Shown: piece by piece, positions 44,735-56,855 of the stretch | Layout of the letters: each line of letters opens with the position of its first letter | How positions within the stretch are numbered: the stretch's first letter is position 1 | IMG/VR virus record: IMGVR_UViG_3300025012_000028 | Span: 150,554 to 214,553 of that record | Length of the DNA stretch: 64,000 nucleotides | Reading direction: 5' to 3' (one strand) | Notes under the pieces: generated by a model | The model's database searches: none | What the model was told of the DNA's origin: nothing | The model's input: the letters and a program-made list of their open reading frames with translations, nothing else | Position numbers and translations under genes: made by a program

Positions 44735-45940
44735 CTATTCTGTTACTTCTTCTACTTCAAGATCATCGGCAATCCCTTCGGAAGCTGAACAATAATTAAA
44801 CTTGGCTCTCATATAATCGGCCAATCCATGTTTCAAAAACTCTTCCCAAAATGCGGGAGTCATTTTCGCCTTGGTCATAAGATCATCTTTCTTATGAGCT
44901 AAGGAAGGTATTTTTTCAGGATTGATCTTATAGGAACTCTTTTCCTTCAGAAAGATTCCTTCTTCCTCATAACAGAATTCGAACAGACCGGAATAAGGTG
45001 TAAGCCCTTCTTCAAAATCAATATTGAACTTGATTTTAGTTTTCTCTTTTGCGGTCCTACATTTGACATTGGTGCTTGTGATCCTCGCCCCAATTACTTC
45101 ATCTTCTTTATCATTCTTAACCTGTGCTTTTGAGAAATCACTAATGATGGAGGAATTGTAAAGCGAACCTTCACCACCCGATATCACCTTACCACCATAC
45201 CCACCAATCTGAGAATATACATGGTTGATGGGAACGATAGGAACATTTTTGATACCAGCTTTGAGTGTTACTGTCCTGAACAATGCGCGGAGTGCCTGTT
45301 GCTTTGTCATATCCCTTGAATCAGTTCCAGTGGTTTTATCCGCAAGTTCTTTCTTCGAACTGATATTACCAATGGAGTCGATACCAATAAAAACTTTATC
45401 ATCGGGATCGAGTTCATCGATTATGTTGATCAGTTGTGTATTAAGTTCTTCAATGGTAGGAACCGGAATGAACAGCATGTTCTCAGTATCAATTCCACGT
45501 TTCTTCAGATCTTCTTTGGAGTTGTTGGACATCTCAGTTTCAAATAGAACGAAGAAGTATCCAAGGTCGCGCTGTGCGTGTTTAGCAGTCTCTAACATGA
45601 GATAAGTCTTACCGACCGAGTTCAGACCCGCCAATTGCCACACCCTACCAGACGGCATACCCTTATACGGATCGCCACTAATTTGAGCATTGAAAAGATA
45701 ATTACCAGTATTAATCCAGTCACGGATGGGATACTTATCTATTTCGTTGTCGCCCATTAACTGCGCGTACTCAGAACCAGACACATGTTTCAGACGTTCA
45801 CCAAAAGACATTGCTTTCTTTTTAGCTTTTTCTTCGGCAGAATTGTCTTTGAGAATTTTCTTCTCTTCTTTTGAGAGTTTGATGTTGTTTTCTAATTTGA
45901 TTTTAAGTTCTTTCAACACGTCTTCTGAAACAATAGCCAT
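44735..45940 (-). CDS. uvsX: RecA-like recombinase
   Basis: TG.Y.FNA.ISG, AGLNSVGKT, IDSIGN, DMT, INHVY, GG.G..Y. Confidence 0.92.
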   Translation of the reverse strand: MAIVSEDVLKELKIKLENNIKLSKEEKKILKDNSAEEKAKKKAMSFGERLKHVSGSEYAQLMGDNEIDKYPIRDWINTGNYLFNAQISGDPYKGMPSGRVWQLAGLNSVGKTYLMLETAKHAQRDLGYFFVLFETEMSNNSKEDLKKRGIDTENMLFIPVPTIEELNTQLINIIDELDPDDKVFIGIDSIGNISSKKELADKTTGTDSRDMTKQQALRALFRTVTLKAGIKNVPIVPINHVYSQIGGYGGKVISGGEGSLYNSSIISDFSKAQVKNDKEDEVIGARITSTNVKCRTAKEKTKIKFNIDFEEGLTPYSGLFEFCYEEEGIFLKEKSSYKINPEKIPSLAHKKDDLMTKAKMTPAFWEEFLKHGLADYMRAKFNYCSASEGIADDLEVEEVTE

Positions 45941-46162
45941 TCACACTTCTCCTTTAGTATTTCTCGTCAAGTAAAAAACCACACCGGTTGGTGCTGATAA
46001 TGGTTCTATTCCAACCAATTCTTTCGCATTTAAACTAGGATAAACTCTTTTGCCTAATAAAGTGAAGAATCGTTCTACAAATTTCTTATGGTACTTTTTC
46101 CTTATTCGTTTCTTTTTATGAGTGATGAATTTGAAATAATTTATGTGGCGGTTTCTTTTCAT
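45941..46162 (-). CDS. Small basic protein containing gp23 major-capsid-like segment
   Basis: KRVYPSLNAKELVGIEPLSAPTGVVFYL vs T4 gp23 RRAIPNLIAFDICGVQPMNSPTGQVF. Confidence 0.6.
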   Translation of the reverse strand: MKRNRHINYFKFITHKKKRIRKKYHKKFVERFFTLLGKRVYPSLNAKELVGIEPLSAPTGVVFYLTRNTKGEV

Positions 46163-50074: not shown

Positions 50075-50349
50075 TTGTCTCTAAACTCCCTCGGTGCCAA
50101 CGGAAAGAAAGCCCAATGTGTTATTTTATCTGCCCAATATGTGTGGGGTGTTCCGCCAATATAACGCCATTCACCATTAGAACAATATTCCGCAAACCCC
50201 ACATTGGAAATTTCATTTGGTTCGGTATAGTCGGAAAAGTGTACCAACACATCTATAATGATATTAAATTGTCCTTGATTAGTATACTCTTCCAACGGAA
50301 GACAATCTTTGATACTGAACCATTCTATCTCTACTTTATCAGGTTCCAC
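50071..50349 (-). CDS. DUF551-like protein
   Basis: WFSIKD.LP...ITHW...P.AP. Confidence 0.65.
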   Translation of the reverse strand: MEPDKVEIEWFSIKDCLPLEEYTNQGQFNIIIDVLVHFSDYTEPNEISNVGFAEYCSNGEWRYIGGTPHTYWADKITHWAFFPLAPREFRDK

Positions 50350-52154
50350 ATCTGCTCCTCTGTTTTAATTTCCACACCAAGTTTCTGTGCTTTAGTATAT
50401 TTATTACTCTTGTCCCACGAATCTTCCGCACAGAAAAGAATGTCCAAATTCTTATTCACAGAGTCCACAATGGTAGCTCCCAATTCCACACACCTAGCTT
50501 CCAGCTTTGCTTTCTTCTGGGAGAAGCTACCAGTGAAGAGAACTTTCTTACCGGACAAGATACCATCTACAATAACAACTTCTTCTTTGGGTTCCGGTTT
50601 CTTGTAACGGACACTATTGATGATCCTTTCCTTTATGCCCCAATTGACATCAAAAGAAAGTTTAGCTTTCTCCAATGTACGCACACCAATCCCAGACGGA
50701 AGGGAAGTAGTATTGGGATTTTCAAATGTAATTTTCATACTCTCAAGACTACCTACATGGTTCAGTAGACTATCGAAAAGTGTGGTTCCCAAACCGTTGT
50801 ATGGCAGATGTCTCATGATGTTTTCAGCAGTTGTCTCATAGACTTTTTCCTGTAAAGCCACATGGAAGTCGTTTTGAGATTTGTAAGATACATCAGGACA
50901 CCACGAAAGTAAAGCGTCAAATGACGTGACATTCCAATTCAAGAGGGACGATTCAGACACGTTTTCAATCCCAATCGACTTAATGAACGATTCCACACGT
51001 TTGACCTCACCACACTCAAGGTTGGGGCATTGAAGATCAACACCGTCCCACCCAAGAACCTCACCACATTCAGGACACTTGTTAGGTAAGGCGACGGCAG
51101 AGGTTTCGATGATTTCGATAATTTTGGGGATCACACATCCACTTTTGATAATTCCAACCCTAGCCCCGATCCCAAGACCTCTATCTAAAATCCACTGCGC
51201 ATTGTTACCAGTGCAACGTGAAATCGTGCTGCCATCGATATCCACAGGATTCACAAGAGCGACCGGTTTCAGTTTCCTCTCTTTGCTCAAGTTCCATTCA
51301 TAACCCAAGATGGTAGTTTCTGTGAAATCCGAATTAACCTTGAAAGCACTTTTCCTTTCAGGAAGGAATTTATCATTTTCATTCTTCCACTCGGAATCAC
51401 TTATAACCAAACCATCAATGTCGTATTGTGCTTCGTCCTTTGAATTAAGATAATATGCCTCCATGCGATCAATGAGGCTTTCTCCAACACTAAATATACA
51501 ATGTTCAGGAGTTTGAAATCCCTGTACCTTGAGGAAATTGAACTGTTCAACCACATTCAGATTATCTGACAGAACTTGATAAGCAAATGCCTCGACCATA
51601 TGAATATTTTCGGAAACCACATCCCTATTCATAAGGCCAACGGTTCCGTTGCGGCGATTCTTGAAAGAAAGGTGTTCGTGACTGTTATCAGTAAGGGTGA
51701 ATTCACCACGGACATCAGTAGGCTCAAGATATGAAATGGTTTTTGGAATGGAAGGGATTTTCATTGCTTTGTCCGTCCAATCGACACCAGACTCCCCATC
51801 ACCACGACTCGTAACTTTCTTAAGATTGCCGTTACGGTATTCCGCATACCAACTACACCCATCAATTTTCAGAGAAGCAAAAAGGTTTTTAATGTTATTC
51901 TTTTTGATCCATTTCCAAAATTTATCAGGTTCGTCTGATTTGAGTTTTTCTAATGAACCGATAACATAATCAAATTTTACATCTCCTGATGTTTCAGTTA
52001 GAGATTCCTTAAACTCAATAAACTCGTCCCACTTAAGTTCTTTCTGAATCTCTTCCAGAAGAAGGTCATAGGCCGCATCCGAAACCAGTTCGTCGCCGTT
52101 CCGATACGCCTTGTTATATTTTACAGCCAGTTCCATTTTTTCTGCTATGTTCAT
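50331..52154 (-). CDS. ligA: NAD-dependent DNA ligase
   Basis: Y..G...VSD..YD, KIDG, SRGDG..G.D, RGE, DGLV, Zn finger CP.C, C-terminal BRCT. Confidence 0.92.
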   Translation of the reverse strand: MNIAEKMELAVKYNKAYRNGDELVSDAAYDLLLEEIQKELKWDEFIEFKESLTETSGDVKFDYVIGSLEKLKSDEPDKFWKWIKKNNIKNLFASLKIDGCSWYAEYRNGNLKKVTSRGDGESGVDWTDKAMKIPSIPKTISYLEPTDVRGEFTLTDNSHEHLSFKNRRNGTVGLMNRDVVSENIHMVEAFAYQVLSDNLNVVEQFNFLKVQGFQTPEHCIFSVGESLIDRMEAYYLNSKDEAQYDIDGLVISDSEWKNENDKFLPERKSAFKVNSDFTETTILGYEWNLSKERKLKPVALVNPVDIDGSTISRCTGNNAQWILDRGLGIGARVGIIKSGCVIPKIIEIIETSAVALPNKCPECGEVLGWDGVDLQCPNLECGEVKRVESFIKSIGIENVSESSLLNWNVTSFDALLSWCPDVSYKSQNDFHVALQEKVYETTAENIMRHLPYNGLGTTLFDSLLNHVGSLESMKITFENPNTTSLPSGIGVRTLEKAKLSFDVNWGIKERIINSVRYKKPEPKEEVVIVDGILSGKKVLFTGSFSQKKAKLEARCVELGATIVDSVNKNLDILFCAEDSWDKSNKYTKAQKLGVEIKTEEQMWNLIK

Positions 52155-52176
52155 ATCTTCTCCTCACTTCAAAATA

Positions 52177-52219
52177 AAAACTCATGATTACTTATACCAC
52201 ATAATCATGAGTTTTGCAA
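52177..52219 (-). promoter_or_regulatory. Terminator hairpin with embedded promoter TTGCAA-17-TATAAG
   Basis: 14-bp IR 52177-52190/52202-52215. Confidence 0.75.
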
Positions 52220-52413
52220 ATCATTTTTTTTTATTTTCGTTAAATCAAATCATCACCACTTTCATCCCAATACGGAACCTCGTAATCATCGGGAAAATGG
52301 ATGGATTCGACTTCGATCAATTCTCTGAGCATACTAATTGAAATGTGTCTCAGTTGATCCTCGTCCAGATCGTTAATCCACTCTTCTATTTTCCGTGATG
52401 TAAACATTTTCAT

Positions 52414-52770
52414 TTAATCTTCCTCCACGTCTATTGTCGATAAAAAGTAAAATGGTCGTTCGTATTCATTGCTAAAGCCAGTACCATCGATGGTAACAAT
52501 CTCTGCTAGTTTTTCTTCATATAGTTTGTTACACTCCATATCCACACGTTCGTAATCTTCATCACTACTATTATTATCTAGCCCCACATACCTGTTGATG
52601 CTTTTATCTCTAAATTCATCAATAATAAAATCCCCAAATCTTTTGGATTCTTCCTGACATTGTGTTAAACATTCGTTGGCGCGTTCTTCATTGAAGAAAG
52701 CTTTGGTAACATACTCATATCTATCTTCATAATCACCCAATACACCCATAATACAATAAACAGTTTTCAA
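52414..52770 (-). CDS. Hypothetical acidic protein
   Basis: ORF track. Confidence 0.55.
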   Translation of the reverse strand: MKTVYCIMGVLGDYEDRYEYVTKAFFNEERANECLTQCQEESKRFGDFIIDEFRDKSINRYVGLDNNSSDEDYERVDMECNKLYEEKLAEIVTIDGTGFSNEYERPFYFLSTIDVEED

Positions 52771-52771
52771 T

Positions 52772-53194
52772 TTAGTTGTTCTCCTTAATCATAAAATCAA
52801 ACCTTCGGATGGCATAATTATTAGTGACCATCGAACCACTTAAACTAGACATTGCCACAACAGAACTTCGTACCAGTTTATGTTCAATCAATGAAGCTAA
52901 CAATTTACCTTTTGGTGTTGGTAAAATTTGAAACTTACCAAAATATTTTTCTTTGTCTTTATGGATGTTGATTAACACATGGGAAACATTTATCAGATGA
53001 AGATCGAATTTTATTTCCTCTGGTGTATTGTATGCAGTTCCTAAACTTCTATTATTAGGAATGCAGTTCACCATATATTGATCTACCGCTTTATTTAATA
53101 TGTCTTCTGGATATATATTTCCATTTGGATCAGTATATTGTTTATGTTCCTCATTATATATGAACGTTGGAAATAACTGAAAGGTTTCAAACAT
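52772..53194 (-). CDS. Degenerate prohead protease (gp21) paralog
   Basis: NGNIYP..IL.KAV..Y, RSLG, INVSH, GK.QIL.TPKGK. Confidence 0.65.
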   Translation of the reverse strand: MFETFQLFPTFIYNEEHKQYTDPNGNIYPEDILNKAVDQYMVNCIPNNRSLGTAYNTPEEIKFDLHLINVSHVLINIHKDKEKYFGKFQILPTPKGKLLASLIEHKLVRSSVVAMSSLSGSMVTNNYAIRRFDFMIKENN

Positions 53195-54937
53195 CTATAT
53201 CTCCTCAATAGTGCTGAACCCACCCACTCTTTTTACAGAGTAATGGTTATCGATATACTTCACCGGAACATCGTTATGACTCATGATCATAGTACATTTT
53301 TTATTCTCGGCTGTAAATTCTTTTAGAATTTCGTAGAAAGTATTTTGCAGATTCTTGTCCAGACCTGTTCCCACTTCATCCAGAATCAACAAGTTGGAAG
53401 CACTCTGACTGTATTTTAAATTGCAGAAAGAGATGAACGCAAAGATGATTGCCAAATCGGAAATTCTTTTCTGACCTTCCGAAAGACTTTCATATTTGAA
53501 ATTCTCTTTGTGTCTGGTTAAGAATTCCTCATTCCATTCTTCATCAAACCGGAACAGAACATCTGCTCCAAATTTCTGAAGGTAAAGACTCAGGAACTTA
53601 TTGATACTAGGAAGATATTTCTTAACCACAAACGCTTTGATCTTATCGTCTGTCAGAAGTGTTCTACCATAGGCATAATGTTTTTTATCATATGCCTTAT
53701 CGTTATAATCTTTCTCAAGCTGTTTCTTTTGTTCGATATAACCTTTCAGCTTTGAATCATCAATCTTAATCTCTTGATCTTTCTCAACTTGAATTTGTTT
53801 CTTGAGATTTGCAATCTGTCTTGTGCCACTTGTTATGGCTTCCTGAAACCCTCGCTCCATATTGATATACTCTTGACACTTATCAATCTTGGGTTGGAAG
53901 GATCTTATCTCAGTTTCTTTTTGGGCCAGTTGTTCTTTGAGGATGGTTTGTTCTTTGAGAATGATAGTGTTATCAGCCGGTCTGTTCATCTCTTCTTCAA
54001 ACGCTTTTATCTTAGAACAAGTCCCACACGTCTTCTGAAGGAACTGAATCTTCTTTCCCTGATTTGCTCTTTCTGTTTCTTGTGCAGCAAGTGTGACATC
54101 GATGTTCTTTAATTTCTGTTCTATCTCACGATATTGATTCTTTAAAGTCTGTACTTCGTTGGATAATTCTGTTTTCTTGGTTTTATACTTTTGAATCTTC
54201 TCAACAGCCAATGTTTTTTTGTCAATTCCTTCTTGCAATTCAACTATTTGGGAATTGATTTCATCTATTTTTGCCGATGTTATTGCCGTTCTTTCATCCT
54301 TAAGCTGTTTCAGTCTTAGAAGGTGATCCTTCTCCTGAGTGATAAGAACATCGGTATAGTTCATATCTTTATTCAAGGAAGCAATCTCTTTGTCGAGAGC
54401 ATCAACTTTGAGTTTGGCAAGCTTGTTCATTGAGGTATACAGTTGAATGTTCAACATCGGCTCAACAACTTCACGCTTCTTGTCTTTGGTAAGTGTCAAG
54501 AAAGATGAATTCTTTGTCAGAGATTTGTAACTAACCTGCTCAAAAATGTTGGGAGTTGTTTTGAGATGATCCTGTTCAATAATTTCTTGATAAGATCGTG
54601 AAGATGATGGGACCGGAACTATCACATCATTTTTATACATACGAAGATAGTTCGGCTTAAGACCACGTTCAATCCTATAAGGAACAGAATTGATGTTGAA
54701 AAAATAATGGACCTCTGTTTCTTTTTTGTTGATGGAATTTATAAGATCTGGTAAATTGAATTTGCGGTATGGTTTACCAAAACACGCAAAATAAACCGCT
54801 TCAGTGATAGAACTTTTGCCCTCACCCGTTTCACCAGATAGTTTGTTCACACCCTGTTTAAAGTTAAACTCGGTCCAGTTGTTGCCATAACTTTGGAAGT
54901 TCCTGATCCTGATCTTTTCAGCTTCAATCATCAACAT
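53195..54937 (-). CDS. gp46: Recombination ATPase (Rad50/SbcC-like)
   Basis: NFQSYGN, GETGEGKS, FGKPYR, coiled coil with C..C hook, LSEGQ, LILDE. Confidence 0.93.
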   Translation of the reverse strand: MLMIEAEKIRIRNFQSYGNNWTEFNFKQGVNKLSGETGEGKSSITEAVYFACFGKPYRKFNLPDLINSINKKETEVHYFFNINSVPYRIERGLKPNYLRMYKNDVIVPVPSSSRSYQEIIEQDHLKTTPNIFEQVSYKSLTKNSSFLTLTKDKKREVVEPMLNIQLYTSMNKLAKLKVDALDKEIASLNKDMNYTDVLITQEKDHLLRLKQLKDERTAITSAKIDEINSQIVELQEGIDKKTLAVEKIQKYKTKKTELSNEVQTLKNQYREIEQKLKNIDVTLAAQETERANQGKKIQFLQKTCGTCSKIKAFEEEMNRPADNTIILKEQTILKEQLAQKETEIRSFQPKIDKCQEYINMERGFQEAITSGTRQIANLKKQIQVEKDQEIKIDDSKLKGYIEQKKQLEKDYNDKAYDKKHYAYGRTLLTDDKIKAFVVKKYLPSINKFLSLYLQKFGADVLFRFDEEWNEEFLTRHKENFKYESLSEGQKRISDLAIIFAFISFCNLKYSQSASNLLILDEVGTGLDKNLQNTFYEILKEFTAENKKCTMIMSHNDVPVKYIDNHYSVKRVGGFSTIEEI

Positions 54938-54955
54938 TCTCCATGTACAAAAATA

Positions 54956-54996
54956 AAAGGATAAATCAATCTACCACGATTTATCCTTTCAGTCTA
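54956..54996 (-). promoter_or_regulatory. Terminator hairpin with embedded promoter TAGACT-17-TAGATT
   Basis: 12-bp IR 54956-54967/54978-54989. Confidence 0.7.
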
Positions 54997-55018
54997 TTAA
55001 TTGATCAATTATTATTTT

Positions 55019-55201
55019 CTAATCGATTCCCAATTCTTTTCTGGCCCATGCTATATCTTCTTCATTTGGTTCTTCAAATCCACTTGTCGCTGTCACAAAG
55101 AACACATAAGCACTTATGGCTTTCTCTTTGTCAGAGATACCAAAATACCTGAACAACATATCCTCAAACGCTTTTAATTGATATTCGACATCTTCATTCA
55201 T
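55019..55201 (-). CDS. Hypothetical protein
   Basis: ORF track. Confidence 0.5.
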   Translation of the reverse strand: MNEDVEYQLKAFEDMLFRYFGISDKEKAISAYVFFVTATSGFEEPNEEDIAWARKELGID

Positions 55202-55461
55202 AATTCATCCTCATTATCACACTCATGATAACCCACAATTTCACAAATCTGTTCTAAGAAATCGGGAGTATTTAAAAGAATTTCATCTACCTGCCAAATA
55301 GATTCGGAGCAAGAAATGTGGTGGTCTTTGATATAAGCTTGACAAATAACCCAAAGAGTTTCATATCTTCTAAGTAAATCGTTCAGTTCTTTTTCTTGAA
55401 GTCTTAATCTAGTAATTCGATTAGCCAAACTTAAACAGATGGGTTCATTACACTGATTCAT
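55198..55461 (-). CDS. Hypothetical protein
   Basis: ORF track. Confidence 0.5.
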   Translation of the reverse strand: MNQCNEPICLSLANRITRLRLQEKELNDLLRRYETLWVICQAYIKDHHISCSESIWQVDEILLNTPDFLEQICEIVGYHECDNEDEL

Positions 55462-55812
55462 TTAAACTCCTTCCTTTTCCAGAAGCAAAGCTTCCTTATA
55501 TAGAATGTCAAAACACTCTTTCAGTTTATCAGGATCGATATCGGTTCCCATATCCAGTTCGTTGGTGTAAGCCGCAACCACTTCGATGGGAGAACTTTCT
55601 TGATTTACACTCTCTTCCATCTTATTCAGGTCAACAGATTCAAGGATTTCACATGCCTCAATGACCTCGACCTTATAATTGTTCTTAGATGAAGATAGCA
55701 TTGATTCAAGGAACTTGTCAAATTTTTTCTGTGATTTGCAATCCTTGATAATTATTTTTATGTAGTTATTTTTTACTAATTCAAGAGCTTCCTTCTCTGT
55801 AATTTTTCTCAT
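55462..55812 (-). CDS. gp47 C-terminal domain as separate gene
   Basis: YIKIII...FDKF, acidic linker, Y...L, LYKEA matches gp47 C-terminus. Confidence 0.65.
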   Translation of the reverse strand: MRKITEKEALELVKNNYIKIIIKDCKSQKKFDKFLESMLSSSKNNYKVEVIEACEILESVDLNKMEESVNQESSPIEVVAAYTNELDMGTDIDPDKLKECFDILYKEALLLEKEGV

Positions 55813-56039
55813 TTATTAAAGAACCTCTCTATTGTCTGCATTTCATTTTTAGCAGCATCCCACATATCCATCTTATCACAAAGCCAATTCTGCATTTTGA
55901 TAATTGAATCTCTAAGCTGATAAGGTACAATCAATGTATAATCAGAGTTATCTTCACTCCAATTACCACATATCATAGTTTTATTACTTTCGTGGGCATA
56001 CCATTTCGAATATAAGATACCTCTAAGATCATCAAACAT
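55809..56039 (-). CDS. Hypothetical protein inserted between gp47 halves
   Basis: ORF track, coupled at both ends. Confidence 0.55.
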   Translation of the reverse strand: MFDDLRGILYSKWYAHESNKTMICGNWSEDNSDYTLIVPYQLRDSIIKMQNWLCDKMDMWDAAKNEMQTIERFFNK

Positions 56040-56792
56040 TTATTCCCCCAGAACTGATAAACCGTCTTTTTCGCTGTAGAATATTTTCAAAAATTTGGGA
56101 CTAATTGTATTTGGTTGAAATTCTAAATCAAAGTTCTCACCGAGCGTAAAAAAACCCTTGGGTTCTAGAAAATCTCCGAAGTCCTTTTGATAGGGATTAC
56201 CGATATTAATTACATTTTTGTATTGGCTTTGGATATGCATATGACCATTCAAAACGTAGTGGTACTGTGCAAACGAATTTATTTCAAACCCGTCCTTACA
56301 ATCGATCCCTTTAGTGAATCTCATCCCCTTCATATCAGAATGTGTAAGACAAATATCTGCCGGTTTTAAGTCAACATCAGACAAATTTCCTGTGACCCAA
56401 GGAATTGCATAGAATGTATACTTACCAATCTCAAAAATGGTTGGTGTGTCGATATAAGTACAATATTTATACTCATTAAAATTTTCCACAAAGAAGTTAT
56501 GGCTAGTAGTATTCTTGTGGTAACAGGAGTGATTGCCCAACAGATATTTAATATTAACTTGATTCTGTTCAAACCAACCAAACATTCTCTGTTTTAGTTC
56601 TTGAAGAATATAAAGATCGATGTGATCGCGTTTGTCTGTAATATCTCCTAAAGATATTACATATTTGATGTTGTTTTTTAAAATAAATGGAAAGAGTTGT
56701 TTTTCGTAGAACTCCATTTGTGTTTCAAACACCAATTTATTACCATTATTACAACCCATATGTTCGTCTGTTAAAAATAAAATGTCGCCCAT
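56040..56792 (-). CDS. gp47: Recombination nuclease (Mre11/SbcD-like), catalytic domain
   Basis: TD.H.G, LGD..D.R, GNH, GH.H, GNPY...GD; start MGDIL after AAGGAG. Confidence 0.9.
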   Translation of the reverse strand: MGDILFLTDEHMGCNNGNKLVFETQMEFYEKQLFPFILKNNIKYVISLGDITDKRDHIDLYILQELKQRMFGWFEQNQVNIKYLLGNHSCYHKNTTSHNFFVENFNEYKYCTYIDTPTIFEIGKYTFYAIPWVTGNLSDVDLKPADICLTHSDMKGMRFTKGIDCKDGFEINSFAQYHYVLNGHMHIQSQYKNVINIGNPYQKDFGDFLEPKGFFTLGENFDLEFQPNTISPKFLKIFYSEKDGLSVLGE

Positions 56793-56796
56793 TCCT

Positions 56797-56855
56797 TCTC
56801 CTTTATATTTATTTATACAAACAAATCTCCTAAACATAAATAAATATAAAGGAGA
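56797..56855. repeat. Perfect 20-bp inverted repeat carrying both divergent RBSs and late-promoter motifs
   Basis: tctcctttatatttatttat / ataaataaatataaaggaga. Confidence 0.9.

What the first reader, a model, noticed from the sequence alone, without database searches (positions are those of the whole stretch)
52772..53194. Degenerate prohead-protease (gp21) paralog outside the head operon
Seen: gp21 hallmarks (NG.IYP..IL..AV..Y, R.LG, VSH, GK..IL.TP.G), but the GVSSRG.GS serine motif is degraded (VRSSVVAMSSLSGS). The protein is only 140 aa and is coupled to gp46 under an early-type promoter. Inference: a probably inactive decoy of a structural protein that defences can sense; with the gp23 fragments this suggests a 'structural-protein decoy' strategy.
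Basis: partly seen in the sequence, partly recalled or inferred. Interest (0 to 1): 0.6.

Follow-up and report, generated by a model that had tools for sequence, protein, structure and literature searches.

The report
Dead, truncated copy of head protease
A T4-like groundwater phage carries, next to its DNA-repair genes, a short second copy of its head-maturation protease that has lost a catalytic residue and both end regions, is missing from about a third of the phage population, and may bind without cutting to blunt host immunity that senses this protease.

Summary
The ORF at 52772-53194 (-) is real and encodes a 140-aa homologue of the T4 prohead protease gp21. Evidence: Pfam S77 E 1.7e-5; profile-profile 99.95%; AF2 pLDDT 94.6; Z 15.1 and 1.9 A to PDB 5JBL. 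It covers only the core (gp21 residues 38-173). It lacks the autoinhibitory N-terminus and the C-terminal tail. The catalytic His and three other invariant residues are gone; the Ser and Asp positions remain.

The genome's true gp21 (228 aa, intact His/Ser/Asp) lies about 135 kb away, ahead of gp22 and gp23, with two T4-type late promoter motifs directly upstream. The paralogue has none nearby and abuts the gp46 stop codon.

It is not a one-off. About 30 diverged short gp21-like proteins from metagenomes share the truncation and mostly lack His and Ser. All five contexts examined are DNA or nucleotide-metabolism regions.

In two groundwater samples, a co-occurring strain lacks exactly this gene (a 422-bp indel, about 37% of the population).

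A published precedent exists: the "cryptic protease" paralogues of phiKZ-like phages, whose function is unknown.

The decoy idea is untested. It is now plausible, because CBASS sensors are triggered by gp21 cleavage. The "early-type promoter" claim is not supported.

The parts
52772..53194 (-). 140-aa stand-alone gp21-core paralogue (pseudoprotease). It matches gp21 residues 38-173 only.
53027..53029 (-). Codon of N56, the position aligned with the catalytic His (T4 H85; H79 of this phage's gp21). No His occurs in residues 51-65.
52862..52864 (-). Codon of S111, aligned with the catalytic Ser (T4 S140; S132 of the true gp21). The flanking invariant Arg and Gly are replaced, giving S-V-V-A-M-S.
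52796..52798 (-). Codon of D133, aligned with the third triad residue Asp. It is kept here and in most short homologues.
52774..53195 (.). A 422-bp one-gene cassette that is absent from a co-occurring strain. The joint is 52773|53196. The deletion form keeps the gp46 end (...IEEI plus TAA) and an RBS plus TTG start for the next ORF.
53201..53206 (-). GAGGAG ribosome-binding site for the paralogue, inside the last codons of gp46. The gp46 TAG stop abuts the paralogue ATG, in frame.
53195..54937 (-). gp46 (Rad50/SbcC-like recombination ATPase), the upstream gene coupled to the paralogue.
52414..52770 (-). Downstream ORF of unknown function. It is 118 aa from TTG, or 111 aa from ATG. Its RBS (AAGGAG) lies in the last codons of the paralogue.
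54954..54991 (-). Terminator-like hairpin just upstream of gp46.
56810..56817 (-). Nearest upstream T4-type late promoter motif (TATAAATA) on this strand. It lies 18 nt before the likely gp47 start. There is none between it (apart from one inside gp47) and the paralogue.

Best explanation
Shown:
- The gene encodes a free-standing, catalytically disabled copy of the core domain of the prohead protease gp21.
- It keeps the gp21 fold.
- It has lost the catalytic His, three other residues that are invariant in true gp21s, the N-terminal segment and the C-terminal tail.
- It sits among recombination and replication genes, abutting gp46. No late promoter is adjacent, whereas the true gp21 has two.
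- It is a dispensable one-gene cassette, present in about 63% of the natural population.
- It belongs to a wider, fast-evolving family of short gp21 paralogues that lack the catalytic triad.

From the literature: in T4 gp21 the N-terminal segment blocks the active site. In a giant-phage protease the C-terminal region is inferred to target the enzyme to the prohead.

Inferred mechanism:
- The protein stays in the cytoplasm instead of entering proheads.
- It acts as a binder that does not cut.
- It most plausibly occupies gp21 recognition sites on host immune 'tripwire' sensors, such as the activation loops of CBASS CD-NTases. This would stop free gp21 from tripping abortive-infection immunity.
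- On this reading it is an anti-defence shield built from the very protein that is sensed.
For: Identity and fold: pLDDT 94.6; Z 15.1 to 5JBL; model 1-138 matches gp21 38-173.

Inactivity:
- There is no His at the catalytic position.
- R49, H79, R134 and G137, invariant in 45 true gp21s, are replaced.
- Every full-length homologue in the tally keeps the His, and complete ones also keep Ser and Asp. Of about 32 short homologues, only three keep the His (one by an uncertain alignment) and few keep the Ser.

Missing termini:
- The N-terminal residues of T4 gp21 block the active site until they are self-cleaved (PMC9958956).
- The C-terminal region is inferred to target a giant-phage protease to the prohead (PMC5694885).

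A separate true gp21 exists, with two TATAAATA motifs directly upstream. None is adjacent to the paralogue.

Accessory status: a joint skips exactly the ORF in two samples, and the depths add up (13.3+7.8 against about 25; 18.9+11.1 against about 33).

Family and contexts: short homologues lie beside an HD hydrolase, RNR/dUTPase, UvsX and a DNA polymerase, never in head modules. Their branches are long, and the window's protein does not group with its own gp21.

Rationale for an immune role: gp21 proteolytic activity is sufficient to activate CBASS by cleaving a CD-NTase loop (PMC12991175). CBASS escape mutations map to prohead proteases (bioRxiv 10.1101/2023.05.21.541620).
Against: - No binding partner has been shown.
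- The host and its defence systems are unknown.
- Expression timing is not established. No RNA data exist. A late-type motif stands upstream at gp47, so late co-expression cannot be excluded.
- A presence/absence polymorphism is also what a decaying, useless gene would show.
- S111 and D133 remain, so residual or non-canonical activity is not strictly excluded.
- The indel rests on short Logan contigs from one study. It was not recovered in assembled contigs.
Confidence: 0.35

Rival explanations
1. Regulator of the true protease. The dead core mixes into, or caps, gp21 oligomers (gp21 is a pentamer). This would restrain gp21 activity outside the prohead or set the timing of its activation. It would be a classic pseudoenzyme controlling its active paralogue.
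For: gp21 is pentameric, and its activation is tightly controlled (PMC9958956). The paralogue keeps the whole core fold and the motifs shared with true gp21s, NG-x-YP and ILxTPxGK. It lacks the prohead-targeting tail, so it would act on the free cytoplasmic enzyme.
Against: It shares only 27% identity with its own gp21 and groups with other short paralogues rather than with that gp21, which argues against a co-evolving interface. A third of the population does without it. It is encoded far from the head genes and has no late promoter of its own.
Confidence: 0.2
2. Neofunctionalised domain. The gp21 beta-barrel has been recruited as a scaffold for a task unrelated to gp21 ligands, for example an accessory factor of DNA recombination, replication or nucleotide metabolism, or an inhibitor of a host protein.
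For: All five contexts examined lie in DNA or nucleotide-metabolism gene blocks: gp46 and ligase here, and elsewhere UvsX, RNR/dUTPase, a DNA polymerase and an HD hydrolase. The gene is tightly coupled to gp46.
Against: The neighbouring gene differs in every case, so no constant partner is evident. These regions of T4-like genomes also hold many unrelated small accessory genes, so location alone says little. The motifs most conserved in the short family are those shared with true proteases.
Confidence: 0.2
3. Functionless remnant. A duplicated or imported protease fragment is drifting towards loss, and the indel polymorphism is that loss in progress.
For: The gene is absent from about 37% of the population with no visible damage to its neighbours. 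Its branch is long. tblastn with it and with three short homologues returned only true head proteases among the listed best hits in cultured phages. Only 4 of 2,562 records gave a second match.
Against: The ORF is intact, has its own RBS and supplies the RBS for the next gene. The fold prediction is very confident. The identical protein occurs in contigs from several samples. About 30 mutually diverged homologues (22-37% identity) keep the same truncated architecture and motifs. The Atlas holds many viral clusters of this size with more than 50 members each.
Confidence: 0.12
4. Active protease with a non-canonical site. S111 and D133 would work with another His (H66, H72, H77 or H105) to cleave a cytoplasmic target.
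For: Residues aligned with the catalytic Ser and Asp are retained. One short homologue (P0011) keeps the full triad.
Against: The catalytic His and the invariant Arg and Gly around the Ser are lost. Across the short family neither Ser nor His is conserved. Catalysis therefore cannot be the family's common function.
Confidence: 0.05

Closest known systems
T4 gp21 prohead (capsid assembly) protease, MEROPS/Pfam S77, PDB 5JBL
   Same: Same fold over the whole model (Z 15.1, rmsd 1.9 A, 125 residues). The family motifs are shared (NG-x-YP, KAV..Y, ILxTPxGK). The positions of the catalytic Ser and Asp are occupied by Ser and Asp.
   Different: - No catalytic His, and no G-x-S-S-R-G-x-G context around the Ser.
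- It lacks gp21 residues 1-37, which include the self-cleaved blocking segment, and the tail beyond residue 173.
- It scores 24.9 bits, under Pfam's 27-bit cut-off.
- It is encoded beside gp46 rather than between the portal and scaffold genes, and has no late promoter directly upstream.
- It is dispensable in nature.
'Cryptic protease' paralogues of phiKZ-like giant phages (SPN3US gp117, 201phi2-1 gp206, PhiPA3 gp143; Thomas et al. 2017, PMC5694885)
   Same: Each is a second, diverged, C-terminally truncated copy of the prohead protease, in a genome that also has the real one. The sizes are similar (136-145 aa against 140 aa). The residue pattern is the same: Ser and Asp align and the His does not. 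Function is unknown in both. Small uncharacterised proteins of such phages (Phabio, Psa21) appear among the structural matches.
   Different: Those are relatives of the S80 (phiKZ gp175) proteases in giant phages. This one is an S77/gp21 relative in a T4-like phage. Direct sequence homology between the two sets was not tested here. The cassette polymorphism, the family-wide loss of the triad and the constant DNA-metabolism context are new observations.
Herpesvirus assemblin proteases (e.g. VZV 1VZV, HCMV, KSHV)
   Same: Same ancestral fold as gp21. Weak but consistent structural matches (Z 5-6.6).
   Different: The similarity is only distant, with no sequence similarity. They have a different (Ser-His-His) site and are dimeric enzymes.
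Phage counter-measures to CBASS (Acb1, Acb2) and the protease 'tripwire' sensing they oppose (PMC12991175)
   Same: The proposed role is the same: keeping gp21-triggered CBASS from killing the infected cell. Like those genes, this one is a small accessory gene outside the structural modules.
   Different: Per PMC12991175, Acb proteins disrupt the nucleotide signal downstream of the sensor. The protein here would act upstream, at the sensor-protease step, and is unrelated to them in sequence and fold. No experimental link exists.

Membership tests
Peptidase S77 / gp21 prohead protease (as an enzyme) | Sequence match to PF03420 above the curated cut-off | tested here: not met
   24.9 bits against a cut-off of 27, E 1.7e-5. 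Homology is nevertheless secure: hhalign 99.95%, E 1.7e-38.
Peptidase S77 / gp21 prohead protease (as an enzyme) | gp21/assemblin fold | tested here: met
   AF2 pLDDT 94.6. Foldseek E 7e-7 to 5JBL. VIA-align Z 15.1, rmsd 1.9 A over 125 residues.
Peptidase S77 / gp21 prohead protease (as an enzyme) | Catalytic His (T4 H85, motif GE-L-x-H-P) | tested here: not met
   Asn, Thr or a gap falls at that column in four different alignments, and residues 51-65 contain no His. The His is invariant in 45 true gp21s.
Peptidase S77 / gp21 prohead protease (as an enzyme) | Catalytic Ser within G-x-S-S-R-G-x-G (T4 S140) | tested here: inconclusive
   S111 aligns with the Ser, but the invariant Arg and Gly that follow are Val and Ser.
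Peptidase S77 / gp21 prohead protease (as an enzyme) | Catalytic Asp | tested here: met
   D133 aligns with D154 of the true gp21. The triad is given as His-Ser-Asp in PMC5694885.
Peptidase S77 / gp21 prohead protease (as an enzyme) | N-terminal pro-segment and C-terminal tail for incorporation into the prohead core | tested here: not met
   The model covers gp21 residues 38-173 only. There are 23 residues before the NG-x-YP motif, against 34 or more in all full-length homologues, and 7 after the Asp strand, against 40 or more in nearly all complete full-length homologues.
Peptidase S77 / gp21 prohead protease (as an enzyme) | Encoded in the head module under late promoters | tested here: not met
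   The true gp21 lies upstream of gp22 and gp23 with two TATAAATA motifs directly upstream. The paralogue lies between gp46 and a DNA ligase with none adjacent.
Peptidase S77 / gp21 prohead protease (as an enzyme) | Cleaves after Glu in L/I-x-E motifs | not testable with these tools
   Needs a biochemical assay.
Truncated inactive prohead-protease paralogues ('cryptic proteases', Thomas et al. 2017) | A second copy in a genome that also has a bona fide prohead protease | tested here: met
   Two PF03420 matches in the 214.5-kb genome: 60.2 bits (true gp21) and 22.8 bits (this gene).
Truncated inactive prohead-protease paralogues ('cryptic proteases', Thomas et al. 2017) | C-terminal truncation to about 135-145 aa, with loss of the catalytic His while Ser and Asp still align | tested here: met
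   140 aa with N56, S111 and D133. This is the pattern described for SPN3US gp117.
Truncated inactive prohead-protease paralogues ('cryptic proteases', Thomas et al. 2017) | Direct homology to the giant-phage paralogues themselves | tested here: inconclusive
   The only evidence is structural matches to small uncharacterised proteins of the phages Phabio and Psa21 (Foldseek E 9e-5 to 6e-4, TM 0.49-0.57). Their sequences were not compared.
Anti-defence decoy or shield proteins | Variable, dispensable presence among close strains | tested here: met
   A joint at 52773|53196 skips exactly the ORF in two samples. The depth across the ORF falls to about 63% of the summed depth of the two forms. One study, short contigs.
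Anti-defence decoy or shield proteins | Made before the sensed protein appears | tested here: inconclusive
   There is no adjacent late motif and the gene is coupled to gp46. However, promoter scans are at chance level, a late motif stands at gp47, and no RNA runs exist.
Anti-defence decoy or shield proteins | Binds an immune sensor and blocks its activation | not testable with these tools
   The host and its defence repertoire are unknown. This needs experiments.

The most novel reading that the evidence does not exclude
Short gp21 paralogues without a catalytic triad form a widespread class of phage anti-immune pseudoproteases. They occupy the protease-tripwire loops of host sensors (CBASS CD-NTases or similar) without cutting them, so the real prohead protease cannot set off abortive infection. 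On this reading, phages recycle the sensed enzyme into its own shield, and the gene comes and goes as a one-gene cassette under fluctuating selection.
Probability: 0.2. Interest if true: 0.85.

Novelty: new member of a known kind. Interest (0 to 1): 0.55.

Why it matters
Truncated, apparently dead copies of the prohead protease were noted once, in phiKZ-like giant phages in 2017, and were left without a function.

This case adds four points:
- The same phenomenon exists for the T4-type (S77) protease.
- It forms a sizeable, fast-evolving family.
- That family loses the catalytic His and Ser as a rule.
- Here the gene behaves as a dispensable cassette in a natural population.

In 2026, gp21 protease activity was shown to be a direct trigger of CBASS immunity. 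The family is therefore a concrete and easily testable candidate for a new kind of counter-defence, acting at the sensing step rather than on the signal. If that fails, it is still a clean example of a viral pseudoenzyme whose role needs explaining.

Tried and rejected
- The search for homologous proteins with the protein found only itself. With the short-family alignment it found 7 proteins. The word index is too coarse for this family.
- The search for related loci in IMG/VR found no close relative.
- tblastn against cultured phages, with the window's protein and three short homologues, returned only true head proteases among the listed best hits. The two 'hypothetical protein' hits inspected (phiXF1_160, 474 aa; RsoM2USA_379, 175 aa) look like unannotated head proteases, not paralogues.
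- Complex prediction of the paralogue with the core of the true gp21 gave no verdict (score 0.02). This is not evidence either way.
- A search for the deletion junction in JGI metagenome contigs and in IMG/VR gave no match.
- Identity look-ups of the neighbouring small proteins returned only the strain that carries the gene. One contig starts 11 codons into it.
- The whole-record search of the 172-kb contig carrying P0002, to look for its true gp21, failed because the record is not held.
- NCBIfam gave no match for either protease copy.
- The sigma-70 promoter scan was at chance level.
- No RNA runs hold this phage.

Full report
**1. The observation**

The minus-strand ORF at 52772..53194 encodes 140 aa.

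The similarity to the T4 prohead protease gp21 is well beyond chance:
- Pfam Peptidase_S77: E 1.7e-5 and 24.9 bits, just under the 27-bit cut-off; residues 22-110 match profile positions 57-144 of 198.
- PHROG 207 'head maturation protease': E 4.5e-12.
- tblastn hits in 156 phage records, the listed ones all annotated head proteases, at 31-38% identity over about 80 residues.
- BLASTP against the phage's own gp21: E 3e-12.

An AlphaFold2 model built on 26 homologues is very confident (pLDDT 94.6, pTM 0.86). Its best solved match by far is T4 gp21, PDB 5JBL. Foldseek gives E 7e-7. VIA-align gives Z 15.1 and rmsd 1.9 A over 125 residues, with model residues 1-138 on gp21 residues 38-173. Herpesvirus proteases follow at Z 5-6.6.

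**2. The true gp21 is elsewhere**

The window is the last 64 kb of a 214,553-bp virus record. That record has two S77 matches.

The strong one (60.2 bits) is a 228-aa ORF at genome 67984-68367. It is followed on the same strand by a gp22-like scaffold gene and by gp23. It has the His (GECGHP), the Ser (GTSTRG) and the Asp that align with T4 H85 and S140 and with the Asp of the published His-Ser-Asp triad.

T4-type late promoter motifs (TATAAATA) are enriched in this phage: 19 in the window against 6.7 expected. Two of them stand directly upstream of the true gp21, and others stand upstream of gp22 and gp23.

The paralogue lies about 135 kb away, in this gene order: gp47 (SbcD-like), four small ORFs, gp46 (SbcC/Rad50-like), the paralogue, two small ORFs, then an NAD-dependent DNA ligase. 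No late motif lies between it and the interior of gp47.

The gp46 TAG stop is followed at once by the paralogue's ATG, and a GAGGAG sits in the last gp46 codons. The coupling to gp46 is therefore real.

The 'early-type promoter' is not supported:
- Sigma-70-like matches are at chance level.
- A late-type motif sits 18 nt before the likely gp47 start.
- A terminator-like hairpin precedes gp46.

**3. Is it inactive?**

The 5JBL chain is the H85A/S140A mutant. This fixes the catalytic columns.

In four independent alignments the paralogue has no His at the catalytic position. It reads LGTAYNTP where true enzymes read G-E-L-x-H-P.

Of the thirteen residues invariant in 45 true gp21s, it has lost R49, H79, R134 and G137, among others. 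S111 and D133 still align with the catalytic Ser and Asp.

T4 itself has no His there.

The protein also lacks two regions:
- The first ~37 residues of gp21. In T4 these block the active site until nine residues are self-cleaved (PMC9958956).
- Everything beyond residue 173. The C-terminal region is inferred to carry giant-phage proteases into the prohead (PMC5694885).

The inference is a soluble core domain that does not enter proheads and does not cut.

**4. It belongs to a family**

An exhaustive HMMER search of 1.84 billion representatives gave 197 hits. They fall into two classes:
- Proteins with 34 or more residues ahead of the NG-R-x-YP motif. Every one keeps the His, and complete ones also keep the Ser and Asp.
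- About 32 short proteins (118-160 aa, with a few up to 200 aa) with only 10-31 residues ahead of the motif, most of which end a few residues after the Asp strand. Only three of these keep the His (one by an uncertain alignment) and few keep the Ser. Most keep the Asp.

The short set matches the true set profile-to-profile at 99.95% probability (E 1.7e-38). Twenty-one of 26 members hit PF03420.

On a weakly resolved tree the short proteins have long branches. They cluster far more than chance would give: 8 label changes against 29 for shuffled labels. The window's protein groups with other short ones (SH-aLRT 85), not with its own gp21. It is therefore not a recent in-genome duplicate. At least a few short forms arose independently; P0011, for example, keeps the triad and sits among true enzymes.

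The ESM Atlas holds many viral clusters of look-alikes of 114-154 aa, each with more than 50 members. BFVD lists small uncharacterised proteins of Yersinia phage fHe-Yen9-04, Aeromonas phage AS-szw and the Pseudomonas phages Phabio and Psa21 among the structural matches.

Where context could be read, the short genes sit in DNA or nucleotide-metabolism blocks on the same strand as their neighbours:
- beside an HD hydrolase in a 172-kb T4-like contig;
- after RNR and dUTPase;
- after UvsX;
- before a DNA polymerase.

**5. A new observation: the gene is a dispensable cassette**

I laid Logan contigs of three groundwater runs (one study) on 50400-56300. In two samples they show a joint from 52773 to 53196 that skips 422 bases, which is exactly this ORF.

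The depths fit two co-occurring strains:

| Sample | Contig with the gene | Joint | Flanks |
|---|---|---|---|
| X1 | 13.3 | 7.8 | about 25 |
| X3 | 18.9 | 11.1 | about 33 |

About 63% of the population therefore carries the gene. gp46 shows two haplotypes at matching depths.

In the deletion form, gp46 still ends ...IEEI, with a TAA stop rebuilt from the two stop codons. The next ORF keeps an RBS (GAGGAG) about nine bases before its TTG. In the carrying form that RBS (AAGGAG) is supplied by the paralogue's last codons. The indel respects gene boundaries on both sides.

Caveats: the evidence is short contigs with 30 letters on the shorter side of the joint, from one study. The junction was not found in assembled JGI or IMG/VR contigs. 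All assembled contigs with the protein are the same strain.

**6. What it most likely does**

What is shown: a stand-alone, triad-defective gp21 core, encoded away from the head genes, dispensable in nature, and a member of a fast-evolving family with the same traits.

What is inferred: it binds rather than cuts.

Two recent papers give this a concrete target:
- T4 gp21 activity is sufficient to activate CBASS, by cleaving a disordered activation loop of the CD-NTase at L/I-x-E-type sites. Such loops occur in about 24% of CBASS operons (PMC12991175).
- CBASS escape mutations map to prohead proteases (bioRxiv 10.1101/2023.05.21.541620).

A cytoplasmic, non-cutting gp21 core could occupy such loops, or titrate free gp21, and so keep the tripwire from firing. 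I rate this anti-defence shield reading at about 0.35.

The rivals are:
- a regulator of gp21 itself (0.2);
- a recruited scaffold with an unrelated role (0.2);
- a functionless remnant on its way out (0.12);
- a non-canonical active protease (0.05).

The one complex prediction allowed (paralogue with gp21 core) gave no verdict and counts for nothing.

**7. Comparison with what is known**

The closest described thing is the 'cryptic protease' of phiKZ-like giant phages: SPN3US gp117, 201phi2-1 gp206 (145 aa) and PhiPA3 gp143 (136 aa). Its authors called it unprecedented in 2017 (PMC5694885).

It shows the same pattern: a truncated second copy in which Ser and Asp align and His does not, with function unknown. 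The present gene is the T4-type (S77) counterpart, so I file it as a new member of a known kind.

It is not a member of the gp21 enzyme family in the functional sense. The His, the termini, the genomic place and the Pfam threshold all fail.

**8.

Besides gp23 and gp24, the genome has only one gp23-like piece. It is a 28-residue match (39% identity, E 9e-9 pairwise; PF07068 26 bits) inside a 73-aa ORF at 45941-46162, just upstream of the UvsX-like gene. It exists, but it is thin support for a general 'structural-protein decoy strategy'.

**9. Verdict**

- The 'inactive paralogue' interpretation is supported.
- The 'decoy' interpretation is plausible and now testable, but unproven.
- Interest is moderate to good (0.55).

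Noticed in passing
window 45941-46162 (-): A 73-aa ORF directly upstream of the UvsX-like recombinase gene (44735-45940). It carries a 28-residue stretch like the conserved gp23 motif R-R-I-F-P-N-L...V-G-V-Q-P-M (39% identity to this phage's gp23; PF07068 26 bits). It is the only gp23-like piece in the genome besides gp23 and gp24.
   Followed up: partly
window 50331-52154 (-): A 607-aa NAD-dependent (LigA-type) DNA ligase with adenylation, OB and BRCT domains, in a T4-like phage. From general knowledge, T4 itself uses an ATP-dependent ligase.
   Followed up: no
window 53281-53453 and 54542-54833 (gp46): Two haplotypes of gp46 coexist in the groundwater samples (11 differences in 173 bases, 16 in 292). 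Their depths match the strains with and without the paralogue. Several public assemblies break their contigs in this region.
   Followed up: partly
window 56792-56837 (-): The longest gp47 ORF starts at 56837. However, a TATAAATA late-promoter motif (56810-56817) and a strong RBS precede the ATG at 56792, which is probably the real start. The recombination nuclease genes may therefore also be transcribed late.
   Followed up: partly
window 53192-53197 (-): The gp46 TAG stop and the paralogue ATG are adjacent and in the same frame, so stop-codon read-through would give a gp46-paralogue fusion. In the strain without the gene the stop is TAA. Nothing suggests that read-through happens.
   Followed up: no
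whole window / genome G000: The phage is a 214.5-kb T4-like virus from groundwater metagenomes (one study). It is very distant from cultured phages: its gp46 is at most 31% identical to the best hits, which are cyanophages, and megablast of 6 kb finds nothing.
   Followed up: partly
L003 8001-8384 (172.7-kb metagenomic T4-like contig): A 127-aa short gp21-like protein (P0002) follows an HD phosphohydrolase gene. It keeps the Ser but has Thr for the catalytic His. It is 44-46% identical to cyanophage gp21s, which suggests a younger, separate origin of the same kind of truncated copy.
   Followed up: partly
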